Virus record (IMG/VR): IMGVR_UViG_3300037882_001770
Span: 186,001 to 250,000 of that record
Strand: one strand, 5' to 3'
Length of the DNA: 64,000 bases
The notes beneath the pieces are model-generated. The model was not told the DNA's origin and searched no databases. It was given only the letters and a program-made list of their open reading frames with translations. Of the stretch, positions 10,811 to 43,574 are shown in pieces (positions within the stretch are counted from its first letter, which is position 1; the number at the start of each line of letters is the position of its first letter). A program made the position numbers and the translations under genes.

Positions 10811-10838
10811 TAGCTCAGTTGCGTAAAAACAACACCCT

Positions 10839-10868
10839 AAACCCCCAGTCCGATGGGGGTTTTCTTTT
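10839..10868 (+). terminator. intrinsic terminator
   Basis: AAACCCCCA-gtccga-TGGGGGTTT followed by T-rich tail. Confidence 0.85.
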
Positions 10869-10940
10869 GGCTACAATTTGATTGACCATTAATTGACATT
10901 TTGCTATACTTGCTTTATGAAAACTAAAAGAGGTATCATT

Positions 10941-11612
10941 ATGAACAAGCGTATTTTGGTAGCCGCAATGGCAGTGGCCGGTTTGCATCTGGTAGGTTGT
11001 AGTTCAACCGGTACTAAATTGTCCAGTGGCGAATCTATTCAACCAGGGGCCAATGCTGGAGTGGCAATTGCAGATCAACGACTGGCGTCAAGTGAATTTA
11101 AGAGCCAGGGCGTCAAGGTCATTTATAATTTGTTTGGCAATGTAGAGGCCATTGAAGTTACTGGCTATGCCGCAGTATGGGGCAATAGCACAAATGCTGC
11201 ACGTGAAAGTTATCGTGTGGCCGAACTTGAAGCTAAAAAATCACTAAGTGATTTTATCAACAAAGAGTCTATTACCAGCACCACTAGTGTTCGAATGATC
11301 AGTAACAATCTCGAGCAGGCACAAGACAACAATACCAACAAGTTTGCAAGCAATAAGTCGCCAAGTTTAGAGGCAGTTGACACTGAGGCCAATAATAGCA
11401 CTCAAGAAAACACAGCAGTTCGAAACAATGCTGTTAAGATTGCTAGCCAGCTCAACACAATCATTACCACCCAAAATCGTGGTATTATTGGCGGACTTTA
11501 TCTCAAAGAAGGCACTGTAATTGATGGTGGACGTGCTGTCAAGGTTGTGATGCGTTGGGATAAAAAACACAACGATGCTCGCAAGCAGATTCGTAACTTG
11601 ATGGCACAATAA
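10941..11612 (+). CDS. lipoprotein (LPP20-like)
   Basis: signal peptide with lipobox LVGC; A..VAELEAK..L motif; promoter TTGACC 10882 / TATACT 10905. Confidence 0.7.
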   Translation: MNKRILVAAMAVAGLHLVGCSSTGTKLSSGESIQPGANAGVAIADQRLASSEFKSQGVKVIYNLFGNVEAIEVTGYAAVWGNSTNAARESYRVAELEAKKSLSDFINKESITSTTSVRMISNNLEQAQDNNTNKFASNKSPSLEAVDTEANNSTQENTAVRNNAVKIASQLNTIITTQNRGIIGGLYLKEGTVIDGGRAVKVVMRWDKKHNDARKQIRNLMAQ

Positions 11613-11614
11613 TT

Positions 11615-12703
11615 GTGCGCCGGCTGGTAGTAATTGGCGCATGCCTGTTAGGGCTGACAGCACCCTTGGCTCAAGCACAGATCACTCCTGTGCTTGCAGC
11701 ATCTTTTGCTCCTAGTCCACTGGGCCTAGCATTGACTGTGGGCAAATGGATCTACGATGCCGCAACCAAGCAACAGGTCTACTATGTCGAAGTGGCAGGC
11801 GAGGGCAATGATCCCGCCCAAGCTAGAGATAATGGATTTCGACTAGCAACCGAAATGGCGTTGGGTAGCTTAATCAGTAGTGAAACCGAAGTACAGGCCG
11901 GCCGGATTCAGCGAGATGAAATTATCAGCTATTCTTCAGGTTTTGTAGAAAGATTTGAAATAATTGAAACTCGCCCAGGCAAACAAGGAACCACTGTGGT
12001 TATGAAGGTCTGGATCAAACGCAGTGCATTGGCTGATCGATTATTGAATCGCAGCAAACAAGCAGGCGAAGTGGATGGTGCTAGAGCCAGTGTACAATTG
12101 CAGACTCTAAACAAAGAACGGGCCACCGGTGATCGCTTGTTGCAAACTGTACTAAACGATTTTCCAAAACGAGCCTTTGATATCGCGCTGAACCCAGCCG
12201 ATATTGTCCGCAACGATCGAAGTGCAGGCATTGAAATTTCTTTTGCTATAGCATGGAATCAAGACTATTTGAAAAGTCTATGGACGGCAGTCGAAGCAAC
12301 TGCACAAAAAAATTCAAACCAAGTTGCAATCATTGGTGTAAATTCAGGGGGATTATTTAGAGGCTACGGCGGGCAAGCACATTACGATGATACTAGAAAA
12401 TACGAATTACTGGTAAATCAGATGGTTATGTCGGGACCATCTGTACTAGTAACTATACGCAACGCCCACAGACTCGTTTTGTACTCGGCTTGTTTTAACT
12501 ACCAAGAGCTGGATCATCAGCCCAGTTATGTGGTTACAAATCGACGTTTTGTGGAATTAAGCCCATACCGCCCTACAGCATTTGTAGACGGCTCCTACAA
12601 AATGCGCAGTAAAATACAAATTCCAGTTAATTTGATCACGCTAGAGCAGGCCGGAATTGTAGAAATGGATGTAGTGGTTCGAAAACAGTGCCCAAATCAG
12701 TAG
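11615..12703 (+). CDS. exported protein, probable partner of the lipoprotein
   Basis: signal peptide ending AQA; G.G.D..QARDNGFR.A.E.A.G..I.SET N-domain. Confidence 0.6.
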   Translation: MRRLVVIGACLLGLTAPLAQAQITPVLAASFAPSPLGLALTVGKWIYDAATKQQVYYVEVAGEGNDPAQARDNGFRLATEMALGSLISSETEVQAGRIQRDEIISYSSGFVERFEIIETRPGKQGTTVVMKVWIKRSALADRLLNRSKQAGEVDGARASVQLQTLNKERATGDRLLQTVLNDFPKRAFDIALNPADIVRNDRSAGIEISFAIAWNQDYLKSLWTAVEATAQKNSNQVAIIGVNSGGLFRGYGGQAHYDDTRKYELLVNQMVMSGPSVLVTIRNAHRLVLYSACFNYQELDHQPSYVVTNRRFVELSPYRPTAFVDGSYKMRSKIQIPVNLITLEQAGIVEMDVVVRKQCPNQ

Positions 12704-12795
12704 TAATTTTGTAACAAGATTGGAAATATTTGCCATAAGTAATATGAGCAGTTCCAGGGTAGTTATAATATACGCAGTTAATTACAGTTGAGATC

Positions 12796-13371
12796 ATGGC
12801 CTTACCAACCGATATAGATTCTGAGAAAGATCCGTCTCGCTTGCTTCAAGAAGCAGGCATGTACGTGTTTATGAGCGATGTTTCAGACGAAAGCATCAAG
12901 CCCATCATTGAATGGATTTTGGTGGAAAATCATGTGGTCAAGAAAAAGAAAAAAGAACTGTTGTTAATGATCTGCAGTGAAGGCGGTTCGGTAGAAGATG
13001 CCTTTGCCTTGATTGATGTAATGAAGTCTAGCAGTATTCCAATCAAGACAGTAGGACTCGGGTGTGTGGCCAGTTCAGGCCTGCTGATATTCTTGGCCGG
13101 TATGAAAGGTCGTAGAATGTTGACTCCTAACACTAGTATCCTGAGTCATCAATACTCAAACTATCACGAAGGCAAGCATCACGAGTTATTTGCCATTGCT
13201 AAAGAACACAGCCTGATTCAAGAACGCATGTTGCGTCATTATCAAGCAACCACCGGACTAAGTGAAGAAATTATTTTGAGCAAGTTGCTACCACCAACTG
13301 ATGTTTATCTATCATCTGACGAAGCACTGGCCTTGGGCCTGTGCGATTACGTTACAGACTTAAAAAAATAA
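12796..13371 (+). CDS. clpP: divergent ClpP-like serine protease
   Basis: ICSEGGSV, GCVASSG (Ser), LSHQ (His), PTDVYLS.DEAL.LGL.D. Confidence 0.85.
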   Translation: MALPTDIDSEKDPSRLLQEAGMYVFMSDVSDESIKPIIEWILVENHVVKKKKKELLLMICSEGGSVEDAFALIDVMKSSSIPIKTVGLGCVASSGLLIFLAGMKGRRMLTPNTSILSHQYSNYHEGKHHELFAIAKEHSLIQERMLRHYQATTGLSEEIILSKLLPPTDVYLSSDEALALGLCDYVTDLKK

Positions 13372-14949
13372 TCAACGCTGTTTAGGCCTACCGTAGGCTT
13401 TTTCGTTGTATTTAGGCTCTTTTTTGTTTTTGTCAATTCCGCCGGTTCTGGCAGTGAGCCCTGAATCAGCTGGCATATAATCAACTAATTCGCCAGCTTG
13501 ACTTGCACCAGGTGCATCAGTAGTAGAACTTTGTTCAACGTTGGGTATTACCTTAGGTTCTTTGTTAATGTTGAACACTAACTTACCACTTGAACTTGAT
13601 GTTGAACTATAACTTTTTTGTGCTTCCAGCGTAACTTCCGTAAACAACTTACTTGGCCAAACAGTGGTAAAACCTTGGATAATAAACTCTCCTTTACTTT
13701 TTTTAGCTTCGGTATACATCTGAACAAATGCAGAGTTATTTAAAATATCAGCGGCAGCTTCTGAAAAGTTAGTTTTCATATTAATTTCATTGCATACTTT
13801 ATAAGCAATACTTGATACTAAATGATTGAGTGGGATAACTTTATTTTCATCATCGGCTACACGGTCTTTGTAAATTTGTTTTAAGTTTTTAGTCAAGTTG
13901 GTATTGTCAATATTAAAATTTTTGTCGCCGTCGTATGATTTTAAGGTCATGACTTGTTCTGATTCAGCTGGAGTTATTAGCTTAAGATCTACAGCCAACT
14001 CTAATGGAGCTGAATCGTGAGTTCCTTTGTCGATCACCTCAAGAATTCTAATAGGTTCTGGATACAGTTCACGGAACTGTGTTATGCCAGCCGCTTCTAG
14101 CTCACGCACACTCTTAATAAGATTGGTACTGGATGCCATGGCACCCTTGGCACCTTTACTTGATAGTTTGATTTGTTTACCTTGAGGATTAATCAATAAA
14201 CTATCGTAAAGTTCGCCACTGGTTTTTTCATTGAAACTTATGATACAATCACTATAGGTTCCGCCCATGAATACTTCTGCGGCTTTGCTGGCATTACCTT
14301 TTACTGGTTGACCATTGATCAATATGATAGGCTGTAACATTTCGCAAAAGTAGTCACGAAACCCAGCAAAATCCATGTTGCCCGATGGAACGCTTACTGG
14401 GAAACTAGCGGCACTGGTTATGATCACAGCGGCATTGTACTCATCTGAGTTTGCACCAAATTTAGTTTGAATTTGTGCAAGAATACTTTCAGGCGTTTGA
14501 CTTTTGAATTCTTTTAAAACCTGACTGGGTTTGTAGCCAACCTTTTCTTTTGATCCACGGGCATCGGCTTGACTGAATCCACCCGGAATATCGTCAGTTT
14601 GAAAAAATTTATTTGAATCGTGAACAGGTTTAATATTTTGTGCAAATTTGGCCAAATATCGTGTACCTACAGCAGTGTCAAACGTAGCAATACCAAATGC
14701 CCGATTGCTGTTACTAGGTTGATTGATCTGCTCAATCGGATGACCTAGTTTTTTTTGTACTTGATCAAATGCTGCTTGGGTTTCTTCTTTGCTAGCATAT
14801 TGCCCAACTTGGGGATAAAATGTTAAACTTTGGAAGACAATTTGATCGTCGGGGTTATCACCACGCTTATAAACAGCACCTGGCACACGACCGCTGAGTC
14901 CACGGCTTTCGTTTAGTATAGTATCGAGTAGATTTAGAATGTCACGCAT
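13372..14949 (-). CDS. hypothetical late protein, possible internal virion protein
   Basis: 525-aa ORF; TAAGTA late promoter at about 14976-14981 (minus); leader MRDILNLLDTILNE. Confidence 0.7.
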   Translation of the reverse strand: MRDILNLLDTILNESRGLSGRVPGAVYKRGDNPDDQIVFQSLTFYPQVGQYASKEETQAAFDQVQKKLGHPIEQINQPSNSNRAFGIATFDTAVGTRYLAKFAQNIKPVHDSNKFFQTDDIPGGFSQADARGSKEKVGYKPSQVLKEFKSQTPESILAQIQTKFGANSDEYNAAVIITSAASFPVSVPSGNMDFAGFRDYFCEMLQPIILINGQPVKGNASKAAEVFMGGTYSDCIISFNEKTSGELYDSLLINPQGKQIKLSSKGAKGAMASSTNLIKSVRELEAAGITQFRELYPEPIRILEVIDKGTHDSAPLELAVDLKLITPAESEQVMTLKSYDGDKNFNIDNTNLTKNLKQIYKDRVADDENKVIPLNHLVSSIAYKVCNEINMKTNFSEAAADILNNSAFVQMYTEAKKSKGEFIIQGFTTVWPSKLFTEVTLEAQKSYSSTSSSSGKLVFNINKEPKVIPNVEQSSTTDAPGASQAGELVDYMPADSGLTARTGGIDKNKKEPKYNEKAYGRPKQR

Positions 14950-15000
14950 TTGCTTTTTCTTTAAGTTAATGTTATACTTATCTAATAAACAGGAGAACCC

Positions 15001-15597
15001 ATGCCAAATTTAGTACCCATTGTAGTAGAACAAACCAGCAAAGGCGAACGCAGTTACGATATATATAGTAGACTGCTGCGTGATCGTATTGTAATGCTAG
15101 ATACAGACGTAAACGAGCATACTGCCAGTTTGATAGTGGCTCAGTTGCTGTTTTTAGAAGCAGAAGATCCAGAGCGCGATATTATTTTTTACATCAACAG
15201 CCCAGGTGGCGTAGTCACGGCAGGTATGGCAATTTACGACACTATGAACTTTATTCGCCCGGATGTAAGCACAGTGGTCATGGGCCAGGCATGTAGCATG
15301 GGAAGTTGTTTAGCTCAGGCTGGCGCCGCAGGTAAACGATTTATTTTGCCAAATGCACGTCATATGATTCACCAACCTTCGGGCGGTGCCAGAGGACAAG
15401 CAACAGATATTCAGATTCAAGCACAAGAAATACTCAAAATGAAAAAATACTTAACAGAGATCTATGTCAAGCACAACACTGCTGGCAAAACCTTTGAGCA
15501 GTTGACCGCAGACATGGAACGCGACAACTTTATGAGTGCTGAAGAAGCAGTGGCCTATGGCTTGGCTGATCAGATTATAACTCGACGCGATGCCTAA
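15001..15597 (+). CDS. clpP: ATP-dependent Clp protease proteolytic subunit
   Basis: [46 protein letters not shown]. Confidence 0.97.
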
Positions 15598-16897
15598 TCA
15601 GCAGGTATTTTGCAACACCCCGTGGTATGAATTACATATCTATTGGGACGGTGGCTTTGGTATTTGTTGTCAAGAAAGCCACCGATTGTATAAAGATTCC
15701 ACACAGTACAACATTGCCAACATGAGCATTATGGAATGGTTTAATAGCCAACCTGTGCGAAAATTCAGAACAGACATACTGGGTGACAGTAAAATATCTG
15801 AGTGCCAGCGTTGTTATATTGAAGAACGACACGGCGGCAACAGTCGTAGATTAAAAAGTAATTTAAAAAGCGTTATCTTTACACGTCAGGCCTTTGATGA
15901 AAGTTTTAAACAAAGTCCAGGATATCCGATATTTTCAACCAACGACCAAACTCAAGGCTACACCACGACCCATCCGATTGATCTGCATGTTGACCTAGGA
16001 AACTACTGTAACTTGGCCTGTAAAATGTGCCATGCACAGGCCAGTAGCACAATTGCAAGCCAAGAAGTAAAATGGGGCATTGCCGAAAGCAAACAGTATC
16101 TTGGTACCGACTGGACCAGAAATCCGCAGGTATGGCAATCGTTTAAACAGCAGTTGTTGGAAATACCAAATTTAAAGAATATACACTTCATGGGCGGCGA
16201 AACTCTACTGACCAATCAATTTGAAGATCTAGTGGACTGGTTGACCGAACATCGACGATTTGAAGTGTGTTTTAGTTTTGTGACCAATGGTACAGTGTTT
16301 AAACCAACACTAATCGACAAACTTAAAAAGTTTCAGCGAGTGGGCATAGAAATCAGTATAGAATCTGTAGATGAACACAATGCTTATCAACGTCAGGGCA
16401 CCGATACTGCTCTGGTACTAGCCAACATCAAACAATATCAAACACACTGCAACAACACCAGCATCACCGTGGCATTACGTCCAGCACCTAGCGCATTGAC
16501 CATTGGCTACTATGTGGGATTATTGCAGTTTGCACTAGACAATCAGTTGGTGGTCAAAAGCAATCTGTGTTACGAGCCAAGATTCTTAAATGCAGAAATA
16601 TTACCTGACAAAACAAAATTGCTTTACCAGTCATATTATCAAGAATTTTTAACACAATTTGCCGATGTACAGGCCAATATCGATTACAATGCCAGCGACT
16701 TGAATAACTATCGATTAATCATCAAAGAACATGCAGAAATGTGCCTGGCCATATTGCAAACCCCGGAGCCCAACGATTATCAACATCAAATTGAATGTCT
16801 GGTCAATCACTGTAGAAAATGGGATGATATTTACGGATACGATGCACGAGTATTATATCCTGAATTAACTGAAATATTGGATCTTTATGGCTATTGA
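15590..16897 (+). CDS. radical SAM protein with N-terminal SPASM/Twitch-like domain
   Basis: [16 protein letters not shown]; N-terminal C..PW...CC...C..C. Confidence 0.9.
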
Positions 16898-17339
16898 TTA
16901 TTCTGTAGTAATAGATATTCATTTACGATCAATATGGCATGATAATCCGCCCGAGATTAATATTGGTATTAATGATGACATCAATAGAATAATATTAACT
17001 GACAATCGAGTATTCCATTATGATTTTACTGCTTCTGAAACTTCAGTATTAACTGTGGAATTATTAAACAAAACCGACACCGATACTGTCGATGGATTAG
17101 ATAAGGCAGTTGTAATAGAATCGGTTGATTTTTTTGGAATATCCGATCCAAAATTTTCCTGGGCCGGAATATACAAGCCCGATTACCCCGAACCCTGGGC
17201 AAGTCAACAAACAGACTTAAAACCGTTGTTAAAAAGCCACACTTATTTGGGCTGGAATGGTAAGTGGACACTGACATTTGATGTGCCTGTGTTTACATGG
17301 GTACACAGGGTGCAAAATCTGGGTTGGATTTACGGTTGA
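16887..17339 (+). CDS. hypothetical protein
   Basis: 150-aa ORF overlapping the radical SAM gene end. Confidence 0.75.
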   Translation: MAIDYSVVIDIHLRSIWHDNPPEINIGINDDINRIILTDNRVFHYDFTASETSVLTVELLNKTDTDTVDGLDKAVVIESVDFFGISDPKFSWAGIYKPDYPEPWASQQTDLKPLLKSHTYLGWNGKWTLTFDVPVFTWVHRVQNLGWIYG

Positions 17340-17364: not shown

Positions 17365-17393
17365 AGTTCTATAGTAAACAAAAAGGAGCCGAA

Positions 17394-17946: not shown

Positions 17947-18215
17947 ATCTAACGCAAATCAAAGCAGAAATTTTAACCGGCGGGTTTGACAATGCCGAAC
18001 TTCGAGAACTAATCGAAACTGTGCAGTATGCTCGAGCTCAACTTGGTAAAGACATCAAGCGACAATTGGCACCCGGTGCAAGTGTCAGTTTTGTTAGTAA
18101 TCGTTCAGGACAACGGGTGTTAGGCACTGTGGAACGGGTGGCCATCAAGAATATTGTGGTGCGCACTCACTTGGGCCTGTATCGTGTGCCGGCCAACATG
18201 ATTGAGGTGGTATAA
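17943..18215 (+). CDS. hypothetical protein (SH3-like C-terminus)
   Basis: GGAGG RBS; G..VSF....G...GTV..VAIKNIVV......YRVPANMI. Confidence 0.75.
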   Translation: MNLTQIKAEILTGGFDNAELRELIETVQYARAQLGKDIKRQLAPGASVSFVSNRSGQRVLGTVERVAIKNIVVRTHLGLYRVPANMIEVV

Positions 18216-18394
18216 TGACAAATCCGATCCCAACTAGCGGTCTTTGGATGACACCAGCAGACATGGATCACTTGACCAGACTCCTAAACGAGTCGGGCAC
18301 CAAAGAGGAACAGCGAATGGCCTGGTATGGTGCCATGTTGGCCCTAAATCTAGCCCATATGCTACACGAAAAAAGCCTAGCAGATGTGGCATAA
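18215..18394 (+). CDS. 59-aa hypothetical protein (not in ORF track)
   Basis: GAGG RBS, TAATG coupling; MTNPIPTSGLWMTP...ADVA. Confidence 0.65.
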   Translation: MTNPIPTSGLWMTPADMDHLTRLLNESGTKEEQRMAWYGAMLALNLAHMLHEKSLADVA

Positions 18395-18501
18395 AAACAA
18401 CACTCTAAACCCCGTTTTAGCGGGGTTTTTTGTGGGTTGTCCAAACGGTTGACCCAAAATGATACCTGCGCTATAATGTATGTATAGTGAAAATAAAGGA
18501 G
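18385..18501 (+). promoter_or_regulatory. palindrome + terminator + early promoter + RBS module
   Basis: TGTGG-N8-CAACA, hairpin AAACCCCG/CGGGGTTT, TTGACC 18449-N17-TATAAT 18472, AAGGAG. Confidence 0.85.
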
Positions 18502-18507
18502 CAGAAA

Positions 18508-18789
18508 ATGGTTGGATTAACAGTAGTGGATGGTGACGTGATCCGTGCATACGACTTCAAGCCCATGGTAGGTCGTGACGACTGCTTTATTGAAGGTCGT
18601 GTGATTGATGCTCACAGCACCGAACAAGGGTATCAGGCCTACAAGATCCTGGTTACTAAAGATCATTTTGGTAACGATCGTGTTTCAACCCAAGCCGGTC
18701 CGGACAACCGTGTTGGTATCGAAATGTTTGTTCCGTGGAGAACCAGCTTTATGGAATTCCAAGGCCGCGTAATCAACTTGTCAAGATAA
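18508..18789 (+). CDS. hypothetical early protein
   Basis: RBS AAGGAG; GDVIRAYDF...DCFIEGRV. Confidence 0.75.
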   Translation: MVGLTVVDGDVIRAYDFKPMVGRDDCFIEGRVIDAHSTEQGYQAYKILVTKDHFGNDRVSTQAGPDNRVGIEMFVPWRTSFMEFQGRVINLSR

Positions 18790-23724: not shown

Positions 23725-23858
23725 GGGTGGAGTTAGCCTTTTTTATTATTTATGGTTAAATGCTTAACCTAAAGGCGTTGCGCATCGTGCAACTTAGTGC
23801 TATACTAGTCCTATGCTGTTGTTAAACAGCGTTTAACAAAGAAAGGTAATTTTTACAA

Positions 23859-24122
23859 ATGAAACATTTTAATCCAGAAACCAAGACGTTTAAAGTATTT
23901 ACTGCATTGCAGTCCGGCAAAGCATTGACAGCTAGCCAAGCATCCAAGATGGGTGTTAAGAACTTGTCAGCAGAAGTAAGCCGTATCCGTTCAAACGGTT
24001 TTGCAGTTTACACCAACAGCCGCAAAGCTGGCAACGGTGTTCAAGTAACCGAATACGTGTTGGGTAAACCAAGCCGTAAATTGGTAGCCGCTGGCTATCG
24101 CGCTCTTGCATTAGGTATCTAA
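23859..24122 (+). CDS. winged helix-turn-helix DNA-binding protein
   Basis: L.SG..LTA.QA...GVKNLSAEVSRIR..G..VYTN; promoter TTGCGC-N17-TATACT. Confidence 0.7.
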   Translation: MKHFNPETKTFKVFTALQSGKALTASQASKMGVKNLSAEVSRIRSNGFAVYTNSRKAGNGVQVTEYVLGKPSRKLVAAGYRALALGI

Positions 24123-24161
24123 TACCTCAACGCTGTCCGATTCAGACCGGACACTGAGCCC

Positions 24162-24187
24162 AAACCCCGTGCAATGCGGGGTTTTTT
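24162..24187 (+). terminator. intrinsic terminator
   Basis: AAACCCCG-tgcaatg-CGGGGTTTTTT. Confidence 0.85.
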
Positions 24188-24262
24188 CTTGACTAAAATA
24201 CCGTTTGACCAATAAATCCATTTCAAGTATAATAATAGTATATTAATAAGTAAGGATGTGCC

Positions 24263-36227: not shown

Positions 36228-37292
36228 ATGGTACAGCGTCTTACACGTAAACTTACCGATGTGGCCTCGGAAGTTGAAAAGCAAATCAAGGCCCACTACA
36301 ATATCACGCAAAAAATACTAGATAGTTTTCGTGAGCAAGCTCAAGCAAAACACACTCTAGGATATAACTTTCCTGAATCAAAAATGGTTGCCATTGATGA
36401 TCTCTGGATTGATTACGAAGTTCAACGAGATGTGCTACACAAACATATTATCAGTATTATGAAAAATTGGGATCCAAGAATTTGTAGCCCAGTTTCAGCT
36501 TGCAAACTAACAGACCGCGAGCGGTGCGATACATACGACGGCCAGCATCGAACCATCTCTGCGGCAATCCTAGGCTATACAGAAATCCCAGGTGCAGTAG
36601 TTCATACCAACGACCCAAACTTTGCCAGTCTAGCATTTGAACAACTCAACGACACAGGTGTCAAACGTTTGGGTCCAGGCGACTTGCATCGCAATGCCTT
36701 GGTGCGTTATAAAAATGGTAGTCACGAACTTCGCAATGTTCGTGCTCGCATCTTGCAAGATCAGTTTGATAACTTGCAAATTGACCTGCAAGACAAAGGT
36801 GCTAGGTCCAGCGATAACCTACGCGGCGATCACGACTACTTTTTTAGTCATTTTAAATATGCCTACAAGGCTATTGATATTGACGAATCCGGCAAGGTGT
36901 TGTGTGCTGTGTTGGATGCTATAAAAACAGTATTTCCTTTGCAGGAAGAAGTTGATCAAGGTGTGTTTATTGGCCTAGTTGAATTGCAACGATTAACCAA
37001 TACTAATCCACGTAATCAACTACCCACGGATTGGATGAAAACCTTGTTGGAATCTGTTAAATCTACTTTTAAAAGCAGTCATTTGATTCATGCCAAAGCA
37101 AAGATTCAATGGGAACACAGCCATCCAGGTGCAGGTTGGGTCGCTCCTACTGCTATGAGTAACTTCATGCGTGAGATTCATCTACGCAATGGTGGCAAAT
37201 TGAATCTTCCTTATCACGGTGAGGGTGCCAAGGTTGGTATTGTGGATGGTAATGTCGCTCCGGGACTATTTCCACAGGGAGCCGAACAATGA
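36228..37292 (+). CDS. ParB/Srx-like (DGQHR) domain protein
   Basis: L.IDYEVQRD, WDP....P, DGQHR..A..LG, A..F..LN...K.L. Confidence 0.8.
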   Translation: MVQRLTRKLTDVASEVEKQIKAHYNITQKILDSFREQAQAKHTLGYNFPESKMVAIDDLWIDYEVQRDVLHKHIISIMKNWDPRICSPVSACKLTDRERCDTYDGQHRTISAAILGYTEIPGAVVHTNDPNFASLAFEQLNDTGVKRLGPGDLHRNALVRYKNGSHELRNVRARILQDQFDNLQIDLQDKGARSSDNLRGDHDYFFSHFKYAYKAIDIDESGKVLCAVLDAIKTVFPLQEEVDQGVFIGLVELQRLTNTNPRNQLPTDWMKTLLESVKSTFKSSHLIHAKAKIQWEHSHPGAGWVAPTAMSNFMREIHLRNGGKLNLPYHGEGAKVGIVDGNVAPGLFPQGAEQ

Positions 37293-37771
37293 ATCCTACC
37301 ATCACAATCAACCTGGCAGATATTTGGGACTATACAGAAATTCCACACATCATGCGAAATCACATGATTGCTGAGTATGGCTATGCTTTTAGACGTGGTA
37401 ACATGATTCTCAAGTACGGATTAAGTGCCGACAACTCTAGAATTTACGGCGAACGTATCTATCGTCAATCCGGCAATTTACCAGGATGGAGAAAACTGCT
37501 GGGCGGCCCCAGTGGTAGCGACATGGCAGATATTGCTCGTGAGTTTGAACAAATATACGGTCTGGAGTTGAATAGAAAAGATGTGTCTATTGATGTTTAC
37601 CAGATGCCCAATGCCTCTGCTTGTGCTGAGTTCGAACGCAAACTGATCACCGATTATATATGGACTCACGAAGGATCAGCACCACTGGGTAACAAAGATT
37701 TTGAGACCTTGCTGGAAGAGCGCAAGTATCGTAATACCCGTATGTTGTCTACTATCATAGAGTTTATCTAA
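37289..37771 (+). CDS. GIY-YIG-like nuclease
   Basis: YGYAF....ILKYGLS......GERI.R; E..LI..Y....G..PLGNK. Confidence 0.6.
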   Translation: MNPTITINLADIWDYTEIPHIMRNHMIAEYGYAFRRGNMILKYGLSADNSRIYGERIYRQSGNLPGWRKLLGGPSGSDMADIAREFEQIYGLELNRKDVSIDVYQMPNASACAEFERKLITDYIWTHEGSAPLGNKDFETLLEERKYRNTRMLSTIIEFI

Positions 37772-37773
37772 CC

Positions 37774-38331
37774 ATGCTTAAAGAATCTCTAGATACGTTT
37801 GTTGCACCCAACTACGGTAAGACTCAGCGCAGTCCCGAAACTTATCAAGCGGTAGCTCAACATTGTCGCCAGCACTTGATTCACTTGGTTACCGAATATC
37901 ATCTTGTAAATAATAATCAACAATTATTACGAGAAATTCGTAACGATATGGATTATTACCTACGACGATATCACGAATACTGTATCCAACAACGTGATGG
38001 TATGAAAGCGCACTACTATGAAATTGGCGCCGACGATGACTGTGACTTTGAACACTTGATACCAGCAGCTCGAATTCGTGATCTGCTGTTATTTGGGATC
38101 ATCACTGTAGAGCAAGCTCTTAATGCTCCTACTGTAAGATTGAGTCGCGCTAAACACATGGCGCTCAAAGATGCTGGTTGGGCCAGTAAAACTCCCGACA
38201 TGTGGTTACCGTTCCGTCGATACACTCAGGTATTTGCCGCAAACTTTCAAACGCATGACGGGGTAGCAATAGATACAGAAACATGGACATTAGAAAAACA
38301 TTTTGATTATTTTAAACATTTGGTGTTATAA
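37774..38331 (+). CDS. hypothetical protein with EHxxP (HNH-like) motif
   Basis: DFEHLIPA...P.V.L....H..L...G....P....PF.RY. Confidence 0.55.
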   Translation: MLKESLDTFVAPNYGKTQRSPETYQAVAQHCRQHLIHLVTEYHLVNNNQQLLREIRNDMDYYLRRYHEYCIQQRDGMKAHYYEIGADDDCDFEHLIPAARIRDLLLFGIITVEQALNAPTVRLSRAKHMALKDAGWASKTPDMWLPFRRYTQVFAANFQTHDGVAIDTETWTLEKHFDYFKHLVL

Positions 38332-38777
38332 TGAGTGAAATTACTTTTAAACGATTTCCTGAAAGCAAGCAAGAACAGATCAGACAGTTTGTGGCCTATG
38401 CACAGATGTGTGGCTTGTCGGGCAAGGACATTCGCAGCATCGGTGACAAGCTGGATCGGCAACGCAAGGTCAGCGAGCGGCAGGCCAACATGGAAATCGT
38501 TAAAGGCTTTGAGTGTTTAAGCATTGGGGATGATGCCAAGAAATACGATAAAAAATATCAACTCAACCAACGTTTCAAACTCAAAACTGCTAACGGCGCT
38601 TACAACTTTGTTTACAACTGGGGTGGTTATACGGTCACCAGTTTAAAAACTAAAAAAACTGTAAGCCACAAGACTGACATCCATGCTTATGAACTTCCGG
38701 TTAGAAACTATGATGAAGTCGCTCGTTATGCAACCTTGTTGGATATTGCATTTGGTAAATTGAAACTGAATTTTTAA
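38331..38777 (+). CDS. hypothetical basic protein
   Basis: TAATG coupling at both ends. Confidence 0.7.
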   Translation: MSEITFKRFPESKQEQIRQFVAYAQMCGLSGKDIRSIGDKLDRQRKVSERQANMEIVKGFECLSIGDDAKKYDKKYQLNQRFKLKTANGAYNFVYNWGGYTVTSLKTKKTVSHKTDIHAYELPVRNYDEVARYATLLDIAFGKLKLNF

Positions 38778-39925
38778 TGATTGAACAATACTATCAACAG
38801 CTATGTCAGGAGTGGGGATATACGCCCACCGCCGATGTATGCACAGGTTACGAATCGGTTATGCCTAGATTGCGAGCACTTGGCAAAGAAGCATGGAACC
38901 GAGCCGACGAAGCGGGGAAGCAATCGATTCAGGATGAAGTATTTAATATCTATCGCAGTGTGGGCGTAGTTCCTATTACCTACTACAATCTGGACGGGTG
39001 TCGTGCTCAAGTCAATGAACTAGTAACCAAGACAAAGTCAGTTAAGAATCATCAGTTAGGAGTGGGCAACAACGAAGGCTTGGCATTTGGTCGGTTTTGG
39101 TTTCCTAACATGCAAGATGCCAAATGGAACGACAACGCCACAGTGAGTATTCGGGCTAGATTTAATCACGACAGCAAACTCAAACGAGCAATCAAGTTGG
39201 CCTATGTACATCGCGACGAAGGTGAGGACACAGTAATACCCAAAAATATTCGCCGTGCATTGGAGCTGGTCAATGGTGGGACCATACAAAACTTCAAACC
39301 TATGAATGCTCGTGCTGTTTGGGAACATATCTGCCCAGTATTTCGTGGCAACGTATTAGACTTTAGTTCGGGATATGGTGGTCGTATGTTTGGAGCAATG
39401 ACTAGTAATCTACGATATCATTACACAGGATTAGATCCAAATACCAGGACATTTCAAGGACTCAATGCACTGGGTGAATTACTTACAGATCAAAATTTAG
39501 GGGCAGGTTATTCTATGCACTGTATTCCCAGTGAGGAATTTGATCCAGACCCTGGCTTCTACGATGCGGCATTCTCTAGTCCACCTTATTTTAATTTAGA
39601 AACCTACACCGATGAACCAACACAATGTATGAATCGTTATACTACATTAGACGAATGGTTTGATGGATATGTAGTTGAAACTATACACATGACTCACAAG
39701 GCATTATGTCAGGGCGGTATGTATGCTGTAAACATTGCTGACTACAAGAACGGAAAGCAAGATTTTAAGATTGTAAACCACTGGATTGAACTAGCCGAAG
39801 CGACTGGATTCAGGCACGTCGAAACAATAGATATGATACTAAATGTTCGCCCAGGAGTTGGCAACAACAAGTTGGAAAAAGCCTACAAAAGCGAAGGCAT
39901 CTATATTTTCCAAAAAAAATCATAA
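38777..39925 (+). CDS. SAM-dependent DNA amino-methyltransferase (N4-C/N6-A)
   Basis: NFKP..A; motif I VLDFSSGYGGR; Y.G.DPN; motif IV FSSPPYFNLE.Y. Confidence 0.88.
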   Translation: MIEQYYQQLCQEWGYTPTADVCTGYESVMPRLRALGKEAWNRADEAGKQSIQDEVFNIYRSVGVVPITYYNLDGCRAQVNELVTKTKSVKNHQLGVGNNEGLAFGRFWFPNMQDAKWNDNATVSIRARFNHDSKLKRAIKLAYVHRDEGEDTVIPKNIRRALELVNGGTIQNFKPMNARAVWEHICPVFRGNVLDFSSGYGGRMFGAMTSNLRYHYTGLDPNTRTFQGLNALGELLTDQNLGAGYSMHCIPSEEFDPDPGFYDAAFSSPPYFNLETYTDEPTQCMNRYTTLDEWFDGYVVETIHMTHKALCQGGMYAVNIADYKNGKQDFKIVNHWIELAEATGFRHVETIDMILNVRPGVGNNKLEKAYKSEGIYIFQKKS

Positions 39926-39943
39926 AAATATATTCGCAAGCCC

Positions 39944-39996
39944 ATAGGCACAATCTATTAAAAACTGTTGACAATAGTATTAAATAAACATATACT
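39944..39996 (+). promoter_or_regulatory. LysR/OxyR-like box plus sigma70 promoter
   Basis: ATAG-N7-CTAT 39944-39958; TTGACA 39968-N17-TATACT 39991. Confidence 0.6.
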
Positions 39997-40036
39997 ATTA
40001 ATCAGTAGTTGTAACAATATTCAAAAGGAAATCTAA

Positions 40037-40180
40037 ATGGAACAATATGTATGTGGAGTATGTGGCCACGTTCACAATGAGGCCGTCGAAGGTGTGTTTG
40101 CAGAACTTAGCGACAACTTTCTTTGCCCTGAGTGCGGGTGCTACAAAGATGAGTACGCAGTACAAGAACTAGCAGTATAA
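40037..40180 (+). CDS. rubredoxin (not in ORF track)
   Basis: MEQYVCGVCGHVHNE...F.EL.D.F.CPECG..K..Y, two CxxC motifs; AAGGA RBS. Confidence 0.9.
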   Translation: MEQYVCGVCGHVHNEAVEGVFAELSDNFLCPECGCYKDEYAVQELAV

Positions 40181-40237
40181 GGTCGACACAGTGAGTAAAT
40201 CACTGTATAATTGTTTTTTTATAAAGGAGAAGTAAAG

Positions 40238-40678
40238 ATGGCAAAATCAGTAAAAGGTACCAAAACAGAACACGCATTGAAAGATGCGTTTGCAGGTGAA
40301 AGCAAAGCCAACCGCCGTTATTTGTATTTCGCAAACATGGCTGACGTAGCAGGCGCACCAGATGTTGCGGCAGTATTCCGTTCCACCGCTGAAGGCGAAA
40401 CAGGTCATGCACACGGCCATATGGAGTACTTGATCACAGGTGGTGCAGGCGATCCTGAAACAGGTCTTCCAGCTGGTTCAGTCAAAGAAGCTTTAGAAAG
40501 TGCTATCGCAGGCGAGACACACGAGTACACCGACATGTACCCAGGCATGGCTAAGACAGCCCGCGACGAAGGCTTTGACGAAATCGCTGACTGGTTTGAG
40601 ACTTTGGCTAAGGCTGAGCGTAGCCACGCAAACAAGTTCACCAAGACTTTGGCGGCTCACTTAGAAGACATCAAGTAA
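40238..40678 (+). CDS. rbr: rubrerythrin (di-iron domain only)
   Basis: [38 protein letters not shown]. Confidence 0.93.
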
Positions 40679-40879
40679 TTGGAAACCAGAACAAGAACTC
40701 TTGTCAAGACAATGATCTACAGGTGCTGGGTCTTGCTCAGCACCTATGTGATGCTGTTGGTCACTGGTCAAAGTTTTGCTGAGGCTATTGTTCCTACTAT
40801 CATTATCAACTGTGTCTGGATGACGTCCTACTACCTGTATGACCGACTCTGGGCACACATTGCCTGGGGACGTGAATGA
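40679..40879 (+). CDS. DUF2061-like membrane protein
   Basis: ET..RTL.KT..YR; YY..DR.W..I.WG. Confidence 0.7.
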   Translation: METRTRTLVKTMIYRCWVLLSTYVMLLVTGQSFAEAIVPTIIINCVWMTSYYLYDRLWAHIAWGRE

Positions 40880-41185
40880 ATGCAAGTTGTCACCTGGTCT
40901 GATTGGCTTGAACGCCATATTCCCTACTACCAACAGCAGCAACAGCAAGACCAGTATGGCAATTATCCACCGGAAGCTGTGTTGATAATTGACCCCACAG
41001 ATCGCTATCAACGCTCAGTTCGTCATGGTTATATTGGCAGCACCTGGGAAGCTATGGACAATCTGATTGCGGCGTTAAACTATCGGTCCAAACCAATATT
41101 CTTGGATACTGACACACACCAACGCTGGTATTGGGGTTTTTGGTCACAAAACGATGCCCTGGCAGCTGTAATACGATTGTCATAA
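40880..41185 (+). CDS. hypothetical protein, related to the F..DA..L family
   Basis: C-terminus WGFWSQNDALAAVIRL. Confidence 0.6.
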   Translation: MQVVTWSDWLERHIPYYQQQQQQDQYGNYPPEAVLIIDPTDRYQRSVRHGYIGSTWEAMDNLIAALNYRSKPIFLDTDTHQRWYWGFWSQNDALAAVIRLS

Positions 41186-41200
41186 AATAACCAGTAAATA

Positions 41201-41272
41201 ACTTAACCGGACACAAGATAAGGTGATCGCTGGAGTCCGTAACCAGCACTAAAGAGCCCAGGCTCTTTTTTT
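41201..41272 (+). ncRNA. candidate small pseudoknotted RNA with terminator
   Basis: TAAATA promoter 41195; hairpin GCTGG/CCAGC whose loop GTCCG pairs with upstream CGGAC; terminator AAAGAGC/GCTCTTT+T. Confidence 0.5.
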
Positions 41273-41345
41273 ATTGTCACAATTTTCTCCTTGATTTTTC
41301 ATATATACTTGTGTTACAGTTTTATTACTGAAGGAGGACAAGACT

Positions 41346-41504
41346 ATGAAACAAAGTAAATTGGTTCGTAAAGTGTATCAGGCCTGTATCGACCATGACG
41401 CTGAGAAACAGCAGGAACTTCGCAAGAAGGAATTTGCCAAGATCTTTAAGCACAAGTCCGCAGGCAAATCATTTGACACCAAGTGGACACTAGTAACGGT
41501 GTAA
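41346..41504 (+). CDS. 52-aa basic hypothetical protein (not in ORF track)
   Basis: AAGGAGG RBS; MKQSKLVRKVYQACIDHDAEKQ... Confidence 0.7.
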   Translation: MKQSKLVRKVYQACIDHDAEKQQELRKKEFAKIFKHKSAGKSFDTKWTLVTV

Positions 41505-41549
41505 CAAAAGTGTAATACTTTTTTCTCTGGCATTGCAGTAAATAAGCAC

Positions 41550-42374
41550 ATGCCAGAAAAAACCTACAGATCAATTTTTATTTCGGATGTACATCTCGGT
41601 ACCCGTGACTGCAAGGCCGAAGCTCTCAACAACTTTCTCAAACACAACACCTGCGAAACCCTGTATCTTGTAGGAGACATAATTGACGCATGGAAAATAC
41701 AACAGAACAAGTGGCGATGGAAACAAAGCCACACCAATGTGATACGCAGAGTAATGGGTCATGCCAAACGTGGCACTCGAGTAATTTATGTGGCCGGCAA
41801 CCACGATGAATTTCTAAGACCCTTGATACCTTTGGGCATTGGCTTTGGCCTGATCGAAGTGGTAAATCAAGCAGAACACATAGGCGTGGATGGCCGACAC
41901 TATCTGGTCACACATGGTGATCTGTTCGACGGTATTACTAGACTGGCACCGTGGCTAGCATTTCTGGGTGACAAACTTTATGATTTTGTATTAAACTTAA
42001 ATTCACAGTTCAATGCTGTTCGTCGTAGGTTGCGCTTGGGTTATTGGAGTCTAAGCCGGTATCTCAAATACAAAGTCAAAAAAGCCGCCGATTTTTTGTT
42101 TCAGTTTGAACGTAATCTTGCTACCTACTGCAAGAAGCGTGGCTACGATGGTGTTATTTGTGGGCACATACATCATGCAGAAATCAAAGAGATAGATGGA
42201 ATCATGTACATGAATGACGGAGACTGGGTTGAGAGTATGACCGCCTTGGTTGAACATCATTCAGGAACATGGGAAATCATAACCTGGACCAAGGAGCACG
42301 ACGATGTGGATACTGATACTGTTGGCCGTGAACATAAACAATCCAAACGACGTACCCGGAAGAGTAAGCATTGA
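41550..42374 (+). CDS. LpxH/PlcP-like metallophosphoesterase
   Basis: FISDVHLG, YLVGDIID.W, GNHDE, HGD.FD, ICGHIH, Y.NDGDWVES.TALVE. Confidence 0.9.
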   Translation: MPEKTYRSIFISDVHLGTRDCKAEALNNFLKHNTCETLYLVGDIIDAWKIQQNKWRWKQSHTNVIRRVMGHAKRGTRVIYVAGNHDEFLRPLIPLGIGFGLIEVVNQAEHIGVDGRHYLVTHGDLFDGITRLAPWLAFLGDKLYDFVLNLNSQFNAVRRRLRLGYWSLSRYLKYKVKKAADFLFQFERNLATYCKKRGYDGVICGHIHHAEIKEIDGIMYMNDGDWVESMTALVEHHSGTWEIITWTKEHDDVDTDTVGREHKQSKRRTRKSKH

Positions 42375-42477
42375 GTTTGCCACCGAATCTGAATGTGTGC
42401 GGGCTCAGTCCACTGTGCAGTCGTGGTTGAAATTTGATTCTTTTCGAGTGATTACCAAATGTCAAAAACAATCTTAG
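42304..42477 (+). CDS. 57-aa exported protein with Cys pair (not in ORF track)
   Basis: AAGGAG RBS at about 42291; MWILILLAV...F.TE.EC..A......C. Confidence 0.6.
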   Translation: MWILILLAVNINNPNDVPGRVSIEFATESECVRAQSTVQSWLKFDSFRVITKCQKQS

Positions 42478-43466
42478 TAATAACCGACAATGTTCCAGAT
42501 CAAATCAACGGTGTGGTCACAACTTTCAAAAACCTGGAAAGTCACGCTGTTGACGCTGGGCATTGTGTTGTTTATCTTGATCCCTCTCAGTTTCCTCATT
42601 GTGCTTGCCCTGGGTATCCTGAAGTTCAACTCTGCTGGCCACACGGCATTAGCACGAAGATTAAGGCGATACAGCCGTCGTATATTCACATTGCCACCGA
42701 AGGCCCAGTAGGCCTATTTGCTCGCTGGTGGTGTGAGCGAAATCACATTCCCTACAATACCAGTTATCACACCGACTTTGCCAAGTTTCTAAAGAAAATG
42801 TATCGTGTGCCTGAGTCCGTGACCTGGTGGTATCTGCGTTGGTTTCACAAGAACAGTCACAGGGTGCTGGTTACAACAGAAAGCATACGGCAAGACTTGT
42901 TGACTCGTGGATTCGCCAATCTGCGTGTGTGGACTCGAGGAGTAGACCGAACCATATTTAACAGCACTCATCGTGGTGAAACTGTGGCAGGCGGTCCGGT
43001 ACTGTTAAGTGTTGGTCGGGTAAGTGTTGAAAAAGGCCTAGATGATTTTTGCCGATTAGACATTCCAGGCGCCACCAAAATTGTAGTTGGGGACGGTCCA
43101 TATAGACAAGAATTACAACGCCGGTATCCTGATATCGTTTTTGTGGGAAGTAAACAAGGAACCGACTTGGCTCGGTATTATGCTCAAGCCGATGTGTTTG
43201 TTTTTGCCAGTCGTGCTGACACTTTTGGTGTGGTCAACATTGAAGCATTGGCCTGCGGAACCCCGGTTGCGGCCTATCCTGTTGCAGGACCCAAGGATAT
43301 TGTTGAGCCTGGACTTACCGGATTCTTAAACAACAATTTACAATTAGCAGTGCAACAGTGCTTGACTCTGGATCGTGCGGCGGTAGAAACAGCCAGCCTA
43401 CAATGGACCTGGGCAGAATGTTGGCGTATATTTGAGGACAATCTAGTAGACTGTTCTGTTGCCTAA
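42459..43466 (+). CDS. GT4 glycosyltransferase (Agt/MgtA-like lipid glycosyltransferase)
   Basis: TD...QINGVV.T, HIATEGP.G, SYHT.F, W.RGVD, VGRVS.EK, DTFG.V..EALACGTPVAAYP. Confidence 0.92.
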   Translation: MSKTILVITDNVPDQINGVVTTFKNLESHAVDAGHCVVYLDPSQFPHCACPGYPEVQLCWPHGISTKIKAIQPSYIHIATEGPVGLFARWWCERNHIPYNTSYHTDFAKFLKKMYRVPESVTWWYLRWFHKNSHRVLVTTESIRQDLLTRGFANLRVWTRGVDRTIFNSTHRGETVAGGPVLLSVGRVSVEKGLDDFCRLDIPGATKIVVGDGPYRQELQRRYPDIVFVGSKQGTDLARYYAQADVFVFASRADTFGVVNIEALACGTPVAAYPVAGPKDIVEPGLTGFLNNNLQLAVQQCLTLDRAAVETASLQWTWAECWRIFEDNLVDCSVA

Positions 43467-43574
43467 AAACAACACATTTAAAGCCCGATAAAACGGGCTT
43501 TTTTCTGGGTTTACCAAAAGGTTGACCAAAAATACCAGATCGGCTATAATAGTTGTATAGTTAATAAAAAGGAG
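43457..43574 (+). promoter_or_regulatory. palindrome + terminator + early promoter + RBS module
   Basis: TGTTG-N8-CAACA; AAAGCCCG/CGGGCTTT hairpin; TTGACC 43522-N17-TATAAT 43545; AGGAG. Confidence 0.88.

What the first reader, a model, noticed from the sequence alone, without database searches (positions are those of the whole stretch)
10817..43574. Repeated palindrome-terminator-promoter-RBS module (three copies)
Seen: at 10817, 18385 and 43457 the same order recurs: (T/A)GT(T/G)G-CnTAAAAA-CAACAC (a TGTTG-N8-CAACA dyad), a GC hairpin with T tail, then TTGACC-N17-TATAAT/TATACT and an RBS. Hairpin stems differ in sequence but keep pairing. In two copies the dyad supplies the last codons and TAA of the upstream gene, and both genes end in VA. 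Known: promoter-stem-loop cassettes (PeSLs) mediate modular shuffling in T4-like phages. Inference: a PeSL-like module with an extra operator for a dimeric regulator.
Basis: partly seen in the sequence, partly recalled or inferred. Interest (0 to 1): 0.7.

Follow-up and report, generated by a model that had tools for sequence, protein, structure and literature searches.

The report
Early-promoter cassettes with a conserved dyad
Three intergenic cassettes in an uncultured freshwater jumbo phage each combine a terminator hairpin, a host-type promoter and a ribosome-binding site, and begin with an 18-bp inverted repeat (TGTnG-N8-CnACA) that many related phages keep just upstream of such promoters, so it is probably a binding site for an unidentified dimeric regulator.

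Summary
At 10817, 18385 and 43457 the same order recurs: dyad/box (TAAAAACAACAC, found only three times in the 317-kb genome), GC hairpin with T-run, TTGACC-N17-TATAAT/TATACT, conserved leader and RBS.

The window comes from a PA5oct-like freshwater jumbo phage. "Three copies" applies only to the box. The promoter and leader belong to a family of roughly 25-40 copies, and there are terminator-promoter modules without the box.

The box is not a private repeat. In 305 kb of related phage DNA chosen by protein homology, GTTG-N8-CAAC occurs 118 times, against 10-24 for other spacings. 43 instances lie within 110 nt upstream of a strong sigma70-type promoter, against 0-2 for controls. The usual position is 9-10 nt (dyad centre about -54) or 46-47 nt (with a terminator between, as in the window).

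The arms are conserved and the spacer varies. The degenerate positions are symmetric and do not covary. This argues for a protein-bound DNA operator rather than an RNA hairpin. The binding protein is unknown, and the nearby wHTH gene carries a different palindrome.

Cassette exchange at the modules is shown by examples (a G002 recombinant; the "CSVA*" end grafted onto a glycosyltransferase gene), but a genome-wide test showed no enrichment.

Verdict: a PeSL-like regulatory cassette with an added, widely conserved TGT-N12-ACA-type dyad.

The parts
10817..10835 (+). Site 1 dyad/box: AGTTG-CGTAAAAA-CAACA(C). It is intergenic, 7 nt after the stop of ORF 10568-10810.
10839..10868 (+). Site 1 intrinsic-terminator-like hairpin (AAACCCCC...GGGGGTTT) with T-run
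10882..10910 (+). Site 1 sigma70-type promoter, TTGACC-N17-TATACT
10926..10943 (+). Site 1 RBS (AAAAGAGG) and ATG of a lipoprotein-like ORF (10941-11612)
18385..18403 (+). Site 2 dyad/box: TGTGG-CATAAAAA-CAACA(C). It holds the last codons (GTG GCA) and the TAA of ORF 18215-18394.
18407..18431 (+). Site 2 terminator-like hairpin (CCCCG-TTTTAG-CGGGG, extended by AAA/TTT) with T6
18449..18477 (+). Site 2 promoter, TTGACC-N17-TATAAT
18478..18510 (+). Site 2 conserved leader (GTATGTATAGTGAAAATAAAGGAGC), RBS and ATG of ORF 18508-18789
43457..43475 (+). Site 3 dyad/box: TGTTG-CCTAAAAA-CAACA(C). It holds the last codons (GTT GCC) and the TAA of the glycosyltransferase ORF 42459-43466.
43480..43504 (+). 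Site 3 terminator-like hairpin (GCCCG-ATAAAA-CGGGC, extended by AAA/TTT) with T6
43522..43550 (+). Site 3 promoter, TTGACC-N17-TATAAT
43551..43583 (+). Site 3 conserved leader, RBS (AAGGAG 43569-43574) and ATG of ORF 43581-43853. Positions 43545-43576 are identical to 43880-43911, the next promoter module, so the 90-aa ORF is flanked by direct repeats.
43859..43917 (+). Next promoter-leader module of the same family, without dyad or hairpin. It is the direct-repeat partner of the site 3 module.
24134..24233 (+). Fourth terminator-promoter module in the window, without the CAACAC box. It has a different dyad TGTCCG-N8-CGGACA (24134-24153), a hairpin at 24162-24184 and TTGACC-N17-TATAAT at 24205-24233.

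Best explanation
Each site is an early-gene regulatory cassette of a PA5oct-like freshwater jumbo phage.

Inferred from sequence:
- A rho-independent terminator insulates the upstream transcript.
- A near-consensus host sigma70-type promoter restarts transcription.
- A conserved leader and Shine-Dalgarno sequence drive the next small gene.

Shown by comparison: the cassette's 5' edge is an 18-bp inverted repeat, TGTnGY-N6-RCnACA, with an A/T-rich centre. It is conserved across many diverged phages upstream of such promoters.

Inferred, most likely reading: the dyad is a DNA operator for a dimeric DNA-binding protein, phage- or host-encoded and not identified. This protein would modulate a subset (about 15-40%) of the early promoters. 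In the simplest copies the dyad is centred near -54. In the three window copies a terminator lies between dyad and promoter, putting the centre at about -91.

Why the genes end in V-A: the left arm plus the spacer reads NNT-GTN-GCN-TAA in one frame. Genes that abut the cassette therefore often end in V-A-stop inside the dyad.

The repeated cassettes also act as points of recombination that move small ORFs between phages, in the manner of PeSLs. This is shown by examples, not by statistics.
For: Anatomy at the three sites.

Uniqueness: the 12-mer occurs exactly three times in the genome.

Promoter family.

Hairpins: 46 distinct hairpin sequences keep their pairing at -11 to -17 kcal/mol across module copies.

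Orthologous boxes are retained in G001-G005 while the 2-3 nt linker and the hairpin change.

Unbiased enrichment in 305 kb of protein-anchored loci:
- GTTG-N8-CAAC: 118 strand-instances, against 10-24 for N6, N7, N9 and N10.
- 43 of these are followed by TTGACn-N16-18-TAnAnT, against 0-2 for controls.

In 74 promoter-associated dyads:
- The arms T-G-T-n-G / C-n-A-C-A are fixed except at the mirror-image positions.
- Of the 29 copies that depart from T/A at those positions, only 3 remain complementary.
- The first spacer base is always Y and the last is R in 72 of 74.
- Gaps to the -35 peak at 9-10 nt and at 46-47 nt.
- The A-rich spacer occurs in both orientations (63:11).

RNA folding: the dyad folds at only -1.3 to -2.9 kcal/mol, and at site 2 the pairing shifts.

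Modules anchored on terminator plus promoter, not on the dyad: 18 of 29 carry the box, against 6% of random 90-nt windows with a dyad of at most one mismatch.

Recombination examples.

Nearest cultured relative: PA5oct. That phage is reported to use TTGAC/TATAATA promoters and stem-loop terminators (PMC7318152).
Against: - No transcript data exist for this phage. Only DNA metagenomes hold it, so promoter and terminator function is inferred from consensus.
- The binding protein is unknown.
- The promoters have near-perfect -35 and -10 elements and may not need an activator.
- The dyad-to-promoter distance falls into several classes (-54, -64, -81, -91, -104, -112) that do not share a helical face. 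This is awkward for a face-dependent activator.
- Half of the canonical copies have a mismatch in the left arm, at a position that doubles as the wobble base of a valine codon.
- The spacer orientation bias (85% A-rich on the sense strand) hints at an additional strand-specific constraint.
- Synteny breaks are not statistically enriched at promoter-bearing junctions.
- The dyad is not promoter-associated in PA5oct, nor enriched in five candidate host genomes.
Confidence: 0.6

Rival explanations
1. The box acts in RNA. It would be a 3'-UTR element of the upstream transcript: an A-rich (AAN)n tract or a small stem-loop directly before the terminator. It would be bound by an RNA-binding protein (Hfq-like, an antiterminator of the nut/boxB kind, or a processing nuclease).
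For: - In the window copies the box lies on the transcribed strand, starts at the stop codon and sits a fixed 6-7 nt before the terminator hairpin.
- AAAAACAACAC is invariant in more than 20 copies of this clade while the neighbouring bases change.
- 85% of spacers are A-rich on the sense strand.
Against: - No covariation: only 3 of the 29 copies departing from T/A stay complementary.
- The stem is worth only -1.3 to -2.9 kcal/mol and is not kept at site 2.
- Many copies have no terminator and sit 9-10 nt from the -35.
- Some copies have the spacer inverted (T-rich).
- The A-run itself is replaced in diverged copies (TAGTAATA, TATTAATA, CGTTATTA, TATAAAGG) while the arms stay.
Confidence: 0.15
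2. The dyad has no regulatory role of its own. It would be the conserved 5' edge of a mobile promoter cassette, kept because recombination (homologous, or by a site-specific enzyme or endonuclease) uses it. Or it would be an A-tract UP element with arms that merely travel with it.
For: - The dyad marks where homology between orthologous genes ends.
- It lies at junctions whose flanks differ between phages.
- The spacer A-tract falls at about -51 to -55 in direct copies, where UP-element distal subsites lie (established knowledge of E. coli and T4 early promoters).
- PeSLs also begin with the stop codon in an AT-rich stretch.
Against: - The arms, not the A-tract, are the most conserved part across lineages that share only 37-40% protein identity in the neighbouring gene.
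- The crossover in the one resolved recombinant lies between the hairpin and the -10, not in the dyad.
- Most promoter cassettes of the family lack the dyad yet are equally mosaic.
- No recombinase is tied to it.
Confidence: 0.15
3. The three copies are a recent intragenomic duplication or a chance resemblance of ordinary intergenic regions, with nothing under selection beyond the terminator and promoter.
For: All three share generic features of phage intergenic regions. Promoters of this family are very alike throughout the genome.
Against: - Between the three copies only the box and the promoter consensus match. The hairpins and flanks differ.
- The box is kept at orthologous sites in at least five related genomes, and the dyad in dozens of diverged contigs.
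Confidence: 0.03

Closest known systems
PeSLs (promoter-early stem-loop cassettes) of T4-type phages (Arbiol et al. 2010, PMC2839356; Comeau et al. 2014, PMC4122927)
   Same: - Intergenic composite that starts at the upstream stop codon in an A/T-rich stretch.
- Contains a G/C stem-loop terminator and a consensus sigma70-type early promoter.
- Repeated among small ORFans.
- Related phages differ by insertion, loss or replacement of ORFs at these cassettes.
- Direct repeats flank single ORFs (43545-43576 and 43880-43911).
   Different: - The host phage is PA5oct-like, not T4-like.
- Here the hairpin always lies upstream of the -35, whereas in PeSLs its position varies.
- Only a minority of the promoter cassettes carry a hairpin.
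- A conserved 18-bp dyad at the 5' edge is not part of the PeSL description.
- Mini-circles are untested.
- No statistical excess of breakpoints was found.
P2/P4/186 late promoters with the Ogr/Delta/B activator site TGT-N12-ACA centred near -55 (as summarised in PMC3931495)
   Same: - Phage promoters with a hyphenated dyad of the form TGT-N12-ACA.
- In the hairpin-less copies the centre lies at -52 to -57 from the inferred start.
   Different: - No Ogr_Delta (PF04606) domain in G000, G001, G002 or three further related jumbo-phage records.
- The promoters here have consensus -35 elements, whereas P2 late promoters depend on the activator.
- Extra conserved bases are present (G at position 5, Y/R at 6).
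- In the window copies the dyad is at about -91.
Other TGT-N12-ACA-type operators of cellular regulators (PpsR/CrtJ; TyrR boxes TGTAAA-N6-TTTACA, from my own knowledge)
   Same: An 18-bp palindrome with outer TGT/ACA and an N12 interior. These operators are bound by dimeric or oligomeric HTH proteins.
   Different: - The inner conserved bases differ.
- No such regulator is identified in the phage or in a host.
- No enrichment of the dyad in five candidate freshwater host genomes.
PA5oct early promoters and terminators (Lood et al. 2020, PMC7318152)
   Same: Nearest cultured relative (clamp loader 55% identical). It is reported to have 32 TTGAC/TATAATA promoters and 36 stem-loop terminators and to rely on the host RNA polymerase.
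   Different: PA5oct has only 7 GTTG-N8-CAAC sites. None is A/T-rich or promoter-associated.

Membership tests
PeSL (promoter-early stem-loop cassette) | Consensus sigma70-like early promoter in an intergenic repeat | tested here: met
   TTGACC-N17-TATAAT/TATACT at all three sites, scoring 10-11 of 12. The family has about 25-40 copies. This rests on sequence only, with no transcript data.
PeSL (promoter-early stem-loop cassette) | Adjacent G/C-rich stem-loop able to terminate upstream transcription | tested here: met
   Hairpins of -12 to -14 kcal/mol followed by T-runs. Stems differ between copies but still pair (46 distinct sequences). Function is not assayed.
PeSL (promoter-early stem-loop cassette) | Begins at the upstream gene's stop codon in an A/T-rich stretch | tested here: met
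   At sites 2 and 3 the TAA of the upstream ORF lies in the dyad spacer. At site 1 the stop is 14 nt upstream.
PeSL (promoter-early stem-loop cassette) | Indel or replacement boundaries between related phages coincide with the cassettes | tested here: inconclusive
   Clear examples exist. A crude genome-wide test gave an odds ratio of 1.4 with p = 0.44 against G001, and no effect once restricted to junctions of at least 60 nt.
PeSL (promoter-early stem-loop cassette) | Recombination between flanking cassettes yields mini-circles | not testable with these tools
   This needs inverse PCR on infected cells. The public runs hold only distant DNA contigs.
P2-type Ogr/Delta-activated promoter | TGT-N12-ACA dyad centred near -55 | tested here: inconclusive
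   Met in the hairpin-less copies of relatives (centre -52 to -57). Not met in the three window copies (about -91).
P2-type Ogr/Delta-activated promoter | Phage encodes an Ogr/Delta zinc-finger activator | tested here: not met
   PF04606 gave no match at E <= 1 in G000 or G001, and only a 9-bit fragment in G002. There was nothing in G006-G008.
RNA stem-loop element (boxB/nut-like or processing hairpin) | Base pairing maintained by compensatory changes | tested here: not met
   Only 3 of the 29 dyads departing from T/A at the variable mirror positions stay complementary. The stem is worth -1.3 to -2.9 kcal/mol.

The most novel reading that the evidence does not exclude
The dyad TGTnGY-N6-RCnACA is the operator of a still unidentified regulator. 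This regulator would control a defined subset of host-polymerase early promoters across a large clade of uncultured freshwater phages, many of them jumbo. It would be a lytic-phage counterpart of the P2 Ogr-type TGT-N12-ACA system, built into mobile promoter cassettes so that shuffled ORFs arrive already wired into the regulon.
Probability: 0.35. Interest if true: 0.6.

Novelty: new variant of a known kind. Interest (0 to 1): 0.45.

Why it matters
Terminator-promoter cassettes are the known currency of gene shuffling in T4-type phages. Finding the same design in a PA5oct-like freshwater jumbo-phage lineage extends that picture.

The added value is the dyad. It is a short motif that is easy to search for. 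It marks a subset of early promoters in dozens of uncultured phages and probably reports a shared regulator.

If the binding protein were found, it would give a handle on temporal gene control in a large group of phages that have no cultured member. It would also explain why unrelated genes in these phages end in the same Val-Ala-stop.

Tried and rejected
- Megablast and blastn of the region and of the module against cultured phages found nothing useful.
- A search for RNA runs found only low-share DNA metagenomes, so no transcript ends could be read.
- Complex prediction with two copies of the wHTH protein plus the dyad DNA was not folded by the tool. It counts as no evidence either way.
- A genome-contig scan for dyad plus TTGAC gave 98 hits, mostly chance coding matches in unrelated taxa. 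A few were small, probably phage-derived contigs in freshwater MAGs. No host was identified.
- Five candidate freshwater genomes showed no excess of the dyad.
- The Ogr_Delta domain search was negative.
- PA5oct lacks a promoter-associated dyad.
- The Fisher test of synteny breaks against promoter-bearing junctions was not significant. It rests on a crude ORF caller.
- Ideas considered and dropped, each for mismatched spacing, mismatched bases or lack of a conserved frame: programmed frameshift or readthrough at TAA-AAA-C, a sigma54 promoter, a T4-type late promoter in the spacer, IHF, Fis, LexA or Pho boxes, and an integron attC-like site.
- The atlas search on the 90-aa ORF 43581-43853 returned only hypothetical viral clusters.

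Full report
**What is in the sequence.**

Each has, in order:
- an 18-bp hyphenated dyad whose right part is the exact 12-mer TAAAAACAACAC;
- 2-3 variable bases;
- TAAA;
- a GC-rich hairpin with a T-run;
- about 20 nt;
- TTGACC-N17-TATAAT (TATACT at site 1);
- a conserved leader and a Shine-Dalgarno sequence;
- an ATG.

The 12-mer occurs exactly three times in the window and nowhere else in the genome, always on the + strand. The promoter scanner ranks the three promoters at 10-11 of 12 matches. The hairpins fold at about -12 to -14 kcal/mol.

ORF 18215-18394 and the glycosyltransferase ORF 42459-43466 end in V-A-TAA inside the dyad. At site 1 the upstream ORF stops 14 nt earlier, and the box keeps an out-of-frame GTT-GCG-TAA.

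Only site 3 is a perfect TGTTG/CAACA dyad. Sites 1 and 2 each have one mismatch in the left arm.

**Context.**

The window is positions 186001-250000 of a 317,493-bp IMG/VR virus record. Its clamp loader is 55% identical to that of Pseudomonas jumbo phage PA5oct. Public runs that hold fragments of it are freshwater and lake DNA metagenomes. PA5oct is reported to use TTGAC/TATAATA promoters and stem-loop terminators (PMC7318152).

"Three copies" describes only the box.
- The promoter and leader (TTGACC...GCTATAATAGTTGTATAGTTAATAAAAAGGAG) form a family of roughly 25-40 members in this genome, most without a hairpin or box.
- Terminator-promoter modules without the box also exist, for example at 24162-24233 and at genome positions 133.3 kb and 134.8 kb.

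**The box in relatives.**

A pattern scan of IMG/VR found about 15 related contigs with the complete module. I fetched five of these records whole or in large part: G001 (344 kb, complete) and G002-G005.

At orthologous sites the 12-mer is kept, while the linker, the hairpin sequence and the flanks change. Several variants were informative.
- Hairpin-less copies put the box 7-10 nt from the -35. Examples are G001:302765, G002:71598 and, in this genome, 288816 (TGTTG-TATAAAGG-CAACAT).
- In some copies the A-run is replaced but the arms are kept (G002:60387, TGTTG-TAGTAATA-CAACA).
- In some copies the right arm is CCACA or CTACA.

**An unbiased sample.**

To avoid selecting on the box, I collected loci by protein homology to the two downstream ORFs, 18508-18789 and 43581-43853. 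This gave 101 loci and 305 kb.

In this sample:
- GTTG-N8-CAAC occurs 118 times counting both strands, against 10-24 for spacers of 6, 7, 9 or 10 and 2-20 for other arm sequences.
- 43 instances are followed within 110 nt by TTGACn-N16-18-TAnAnT, against 0-2 for every control.

Nearly all instances outside the 200 nt upstream of the query gene sit in front of another promoter. The dyad persists in lineages whose copy of the 90-aa protein is only 37-40% identical. Their spacers include TAAAAATA, TATTAATA, CGTTATTA and the inverted TTTTTAGA.

About 15-40% of strong promoters carry the dyad, against 6% of random 90-nt windows. Of 29 modules anchored only on terminator plus promoter, 18 carry it. 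Many of those are orthologs of sites 2 and 3, so the number of independent positions is nearer 5 of 13.

**DNA site or RNA structure.**

Over 74 unique promoter-associated dyads of the form TGTnG-N8-CnACA:
- The only variable arm positions are the two mirror-image ones (left position 4, right position 2).
- They do not covary: T/A 45, A/A 9, G/A 8, T/C 7, G/C 3, G/G 1 and T/T 1. Only 3 of the 29 departures remain complementary.
- The first spacer base is always a pyrimidine, and the last is a purine in 72 of 74. This is again a mirror-symmetric preference without strict pairing.

The RNA stem is worth only -1.3 to -2.9 kcal/mol, and at site 2 it is not the predicted pairing.

Symmetric "don't-care" positions, a variable A/T-rich centre, occurrence in both spacer orientations (63:11) and a preferred position next to promoters are what a dimeric DNA-binding protein would produce. 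An RNA hairpin would not produce them.

The left-arm variable base is also the wobble base of the valine codon where the arm is coding. This explains why that base drifts most in the canonical copies.

**Position.**

The gap from the dyad to the -35 peaks at 9-10 nt, which puts the dyad centre at about -53.5 to -54.5 from the inferred start. A second peak at 46-47 nt is the terminator class, with the centre at about -91; all three window copies belong to it. Smaller classes lie at 20, 37, 60 and 67-68 nt.

The form TGT-N12-ACA centred near -55 is the published description of P2-family late promoters activated by Ogr/Delta. The resemblance is formal only:
- No Ogr_Delta domain is detectable in six related genomes.
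- The promoters here have consensus -35 elements.
- The several distance classes do not share a helical face.

I therefore cannot say whether the factor activates, represses, or acts as a roadblock or insulator at gene ends.

**The wHTH candidate.**

The wHTH gene at 23859-24122 (PF14090) has its own promoter. That promoter carries a different palindrome, GTTGCGCATCGTGCAAC, overlapping the -35. Orthologs keep it with symmetric outer changes. It looks like an autoregulatory operator, but its spacing (TTG-N9-CAA) and GC-rich centre differ from the box. The complex prediction was not executed. Nothing links this protein to the dyad.

**Cassette exchange.**

A gene-by-gene comparison shows that the flanks of all three modules differ among relatives.
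- In G002 the homolog of the site-1 upstream gene is joined to the homolog of the site-3 downstream gene. The module between them has a hairpin region that matches site 1 and a -10/leader that matches site 3, which places a crossover inside the module.
- The glycosyltransferase orthologs of G002 and G004 end AVINT* and ADKY* with no module. In G000 and G003 homology stops four codons before the stop and the gene ends CSVA* inside the dyad. The cassette edge was therefore grafted onto the gene.
- The 90-aa ORF 43581-43853 is flanked by 32-nt identical direct repeats. It is absent from G001 and G004 and lies elsewhere in G002.

Against a general claim, a crude test of synteny breaks at promoter-bearing junctions versus other junctions was not significant. 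The whole region is mosaic and my ORF caller is rough.

**Conclusion.**

The modules are PeSL-like early-gene cassettes in a non-T4 jumbo-phage lineage. The terminator, promoter and RBS are ordinary. The conserved TGT-N12-ACA-type dyad at their 5' edge is real, widespread and most probably a protein operator. Its binding protein and its mode of action remain unknown.

Noticed in passing
window 23777-23828: The promoter of the wHTH gene carries a palindrome, GTTGCGCATCGTGCAAC (23777-23793), overlapping its -35 (TATACT at 23801-23806). Orthologs keep it with symmetric outer changes (G001 ATTGCGCATAGTGCAAT, G003 ATTGCGCATTGTGCAAC). The 5'UTR also has a conserved hairpin, GCTGTT-GTTA-AACAGC. This is a likely autoregulatory operator, distinct from the CAACAC box.
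   Followed up: partly
window 24134-24233: There is a fourth terminator-promoter module without the box. It is preceded by a different dyad, TGTCCG-N8-CGGACA (24134-24153), which is identical in G003.
   Followed up: partly
window 43545-43576 and 43880-43911; family throughout genome: The promoter family keeps a conserved stretch after the -10: TATAAT-N4-GTATAGT-nAATAAAAGGAGC, which amounts to two -10-like hexamers 5 nt apart. Two copies are identical over 32 nt and flank a single 90-aa ORF.
   Followed up: partly
L145, L148, L149, L152, L153, L155 (upstream of homologs of ORF 18508-18789): Relatives carry a second conserved upstream box, AAATCAATGACTTAC, followed by CTAAAA. It is sometimes present in two tandem copies in front of the -35, in place of the CAACAC box.
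   Followed up: no
window 43581-43853: This 90-aa ORF of unknown function has homologs in at least 106 IMG/VR loci, down to 37% identity. Many of them lie behind a dyad-bearing promoter. Pfam and PHROG give no match.
   Followed up: partly
L011, L024, L047; L016, L029, L035, L042, L045: Contigs outside the PA5oct-like group also carry GTTGCATAAAAACAACAC upstream of TTGACA promoters, so the dyad may reach beyond this clade.
   Followed up: no
window 15590-16897, 49471-50604, 61565-62773: Three ORFs match radical-SAM PHROG families. This is an unusual number for 64 kb of phage DNA.
   Followed up: no
window 10941-11612; genome 288910: Two of the dyad-bearing promoters drive ORFs with lipoprotein-like signal peptides (MNKRILVAAMAVAGLHLVGCSS...; MKRKLLYTLMFGSVIVLTAC...).
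   Followed up: no
genome 166027 (outside window), G005 36315, G003 40393: A perfect TGTTG-CGGAAAAA-CAACA dyad lies inside a small coding sequence (reading FVAEKQQ), about 65 nt before that gene's stop and the next promoter. It is conserved in two relatives.
   Followed up: no
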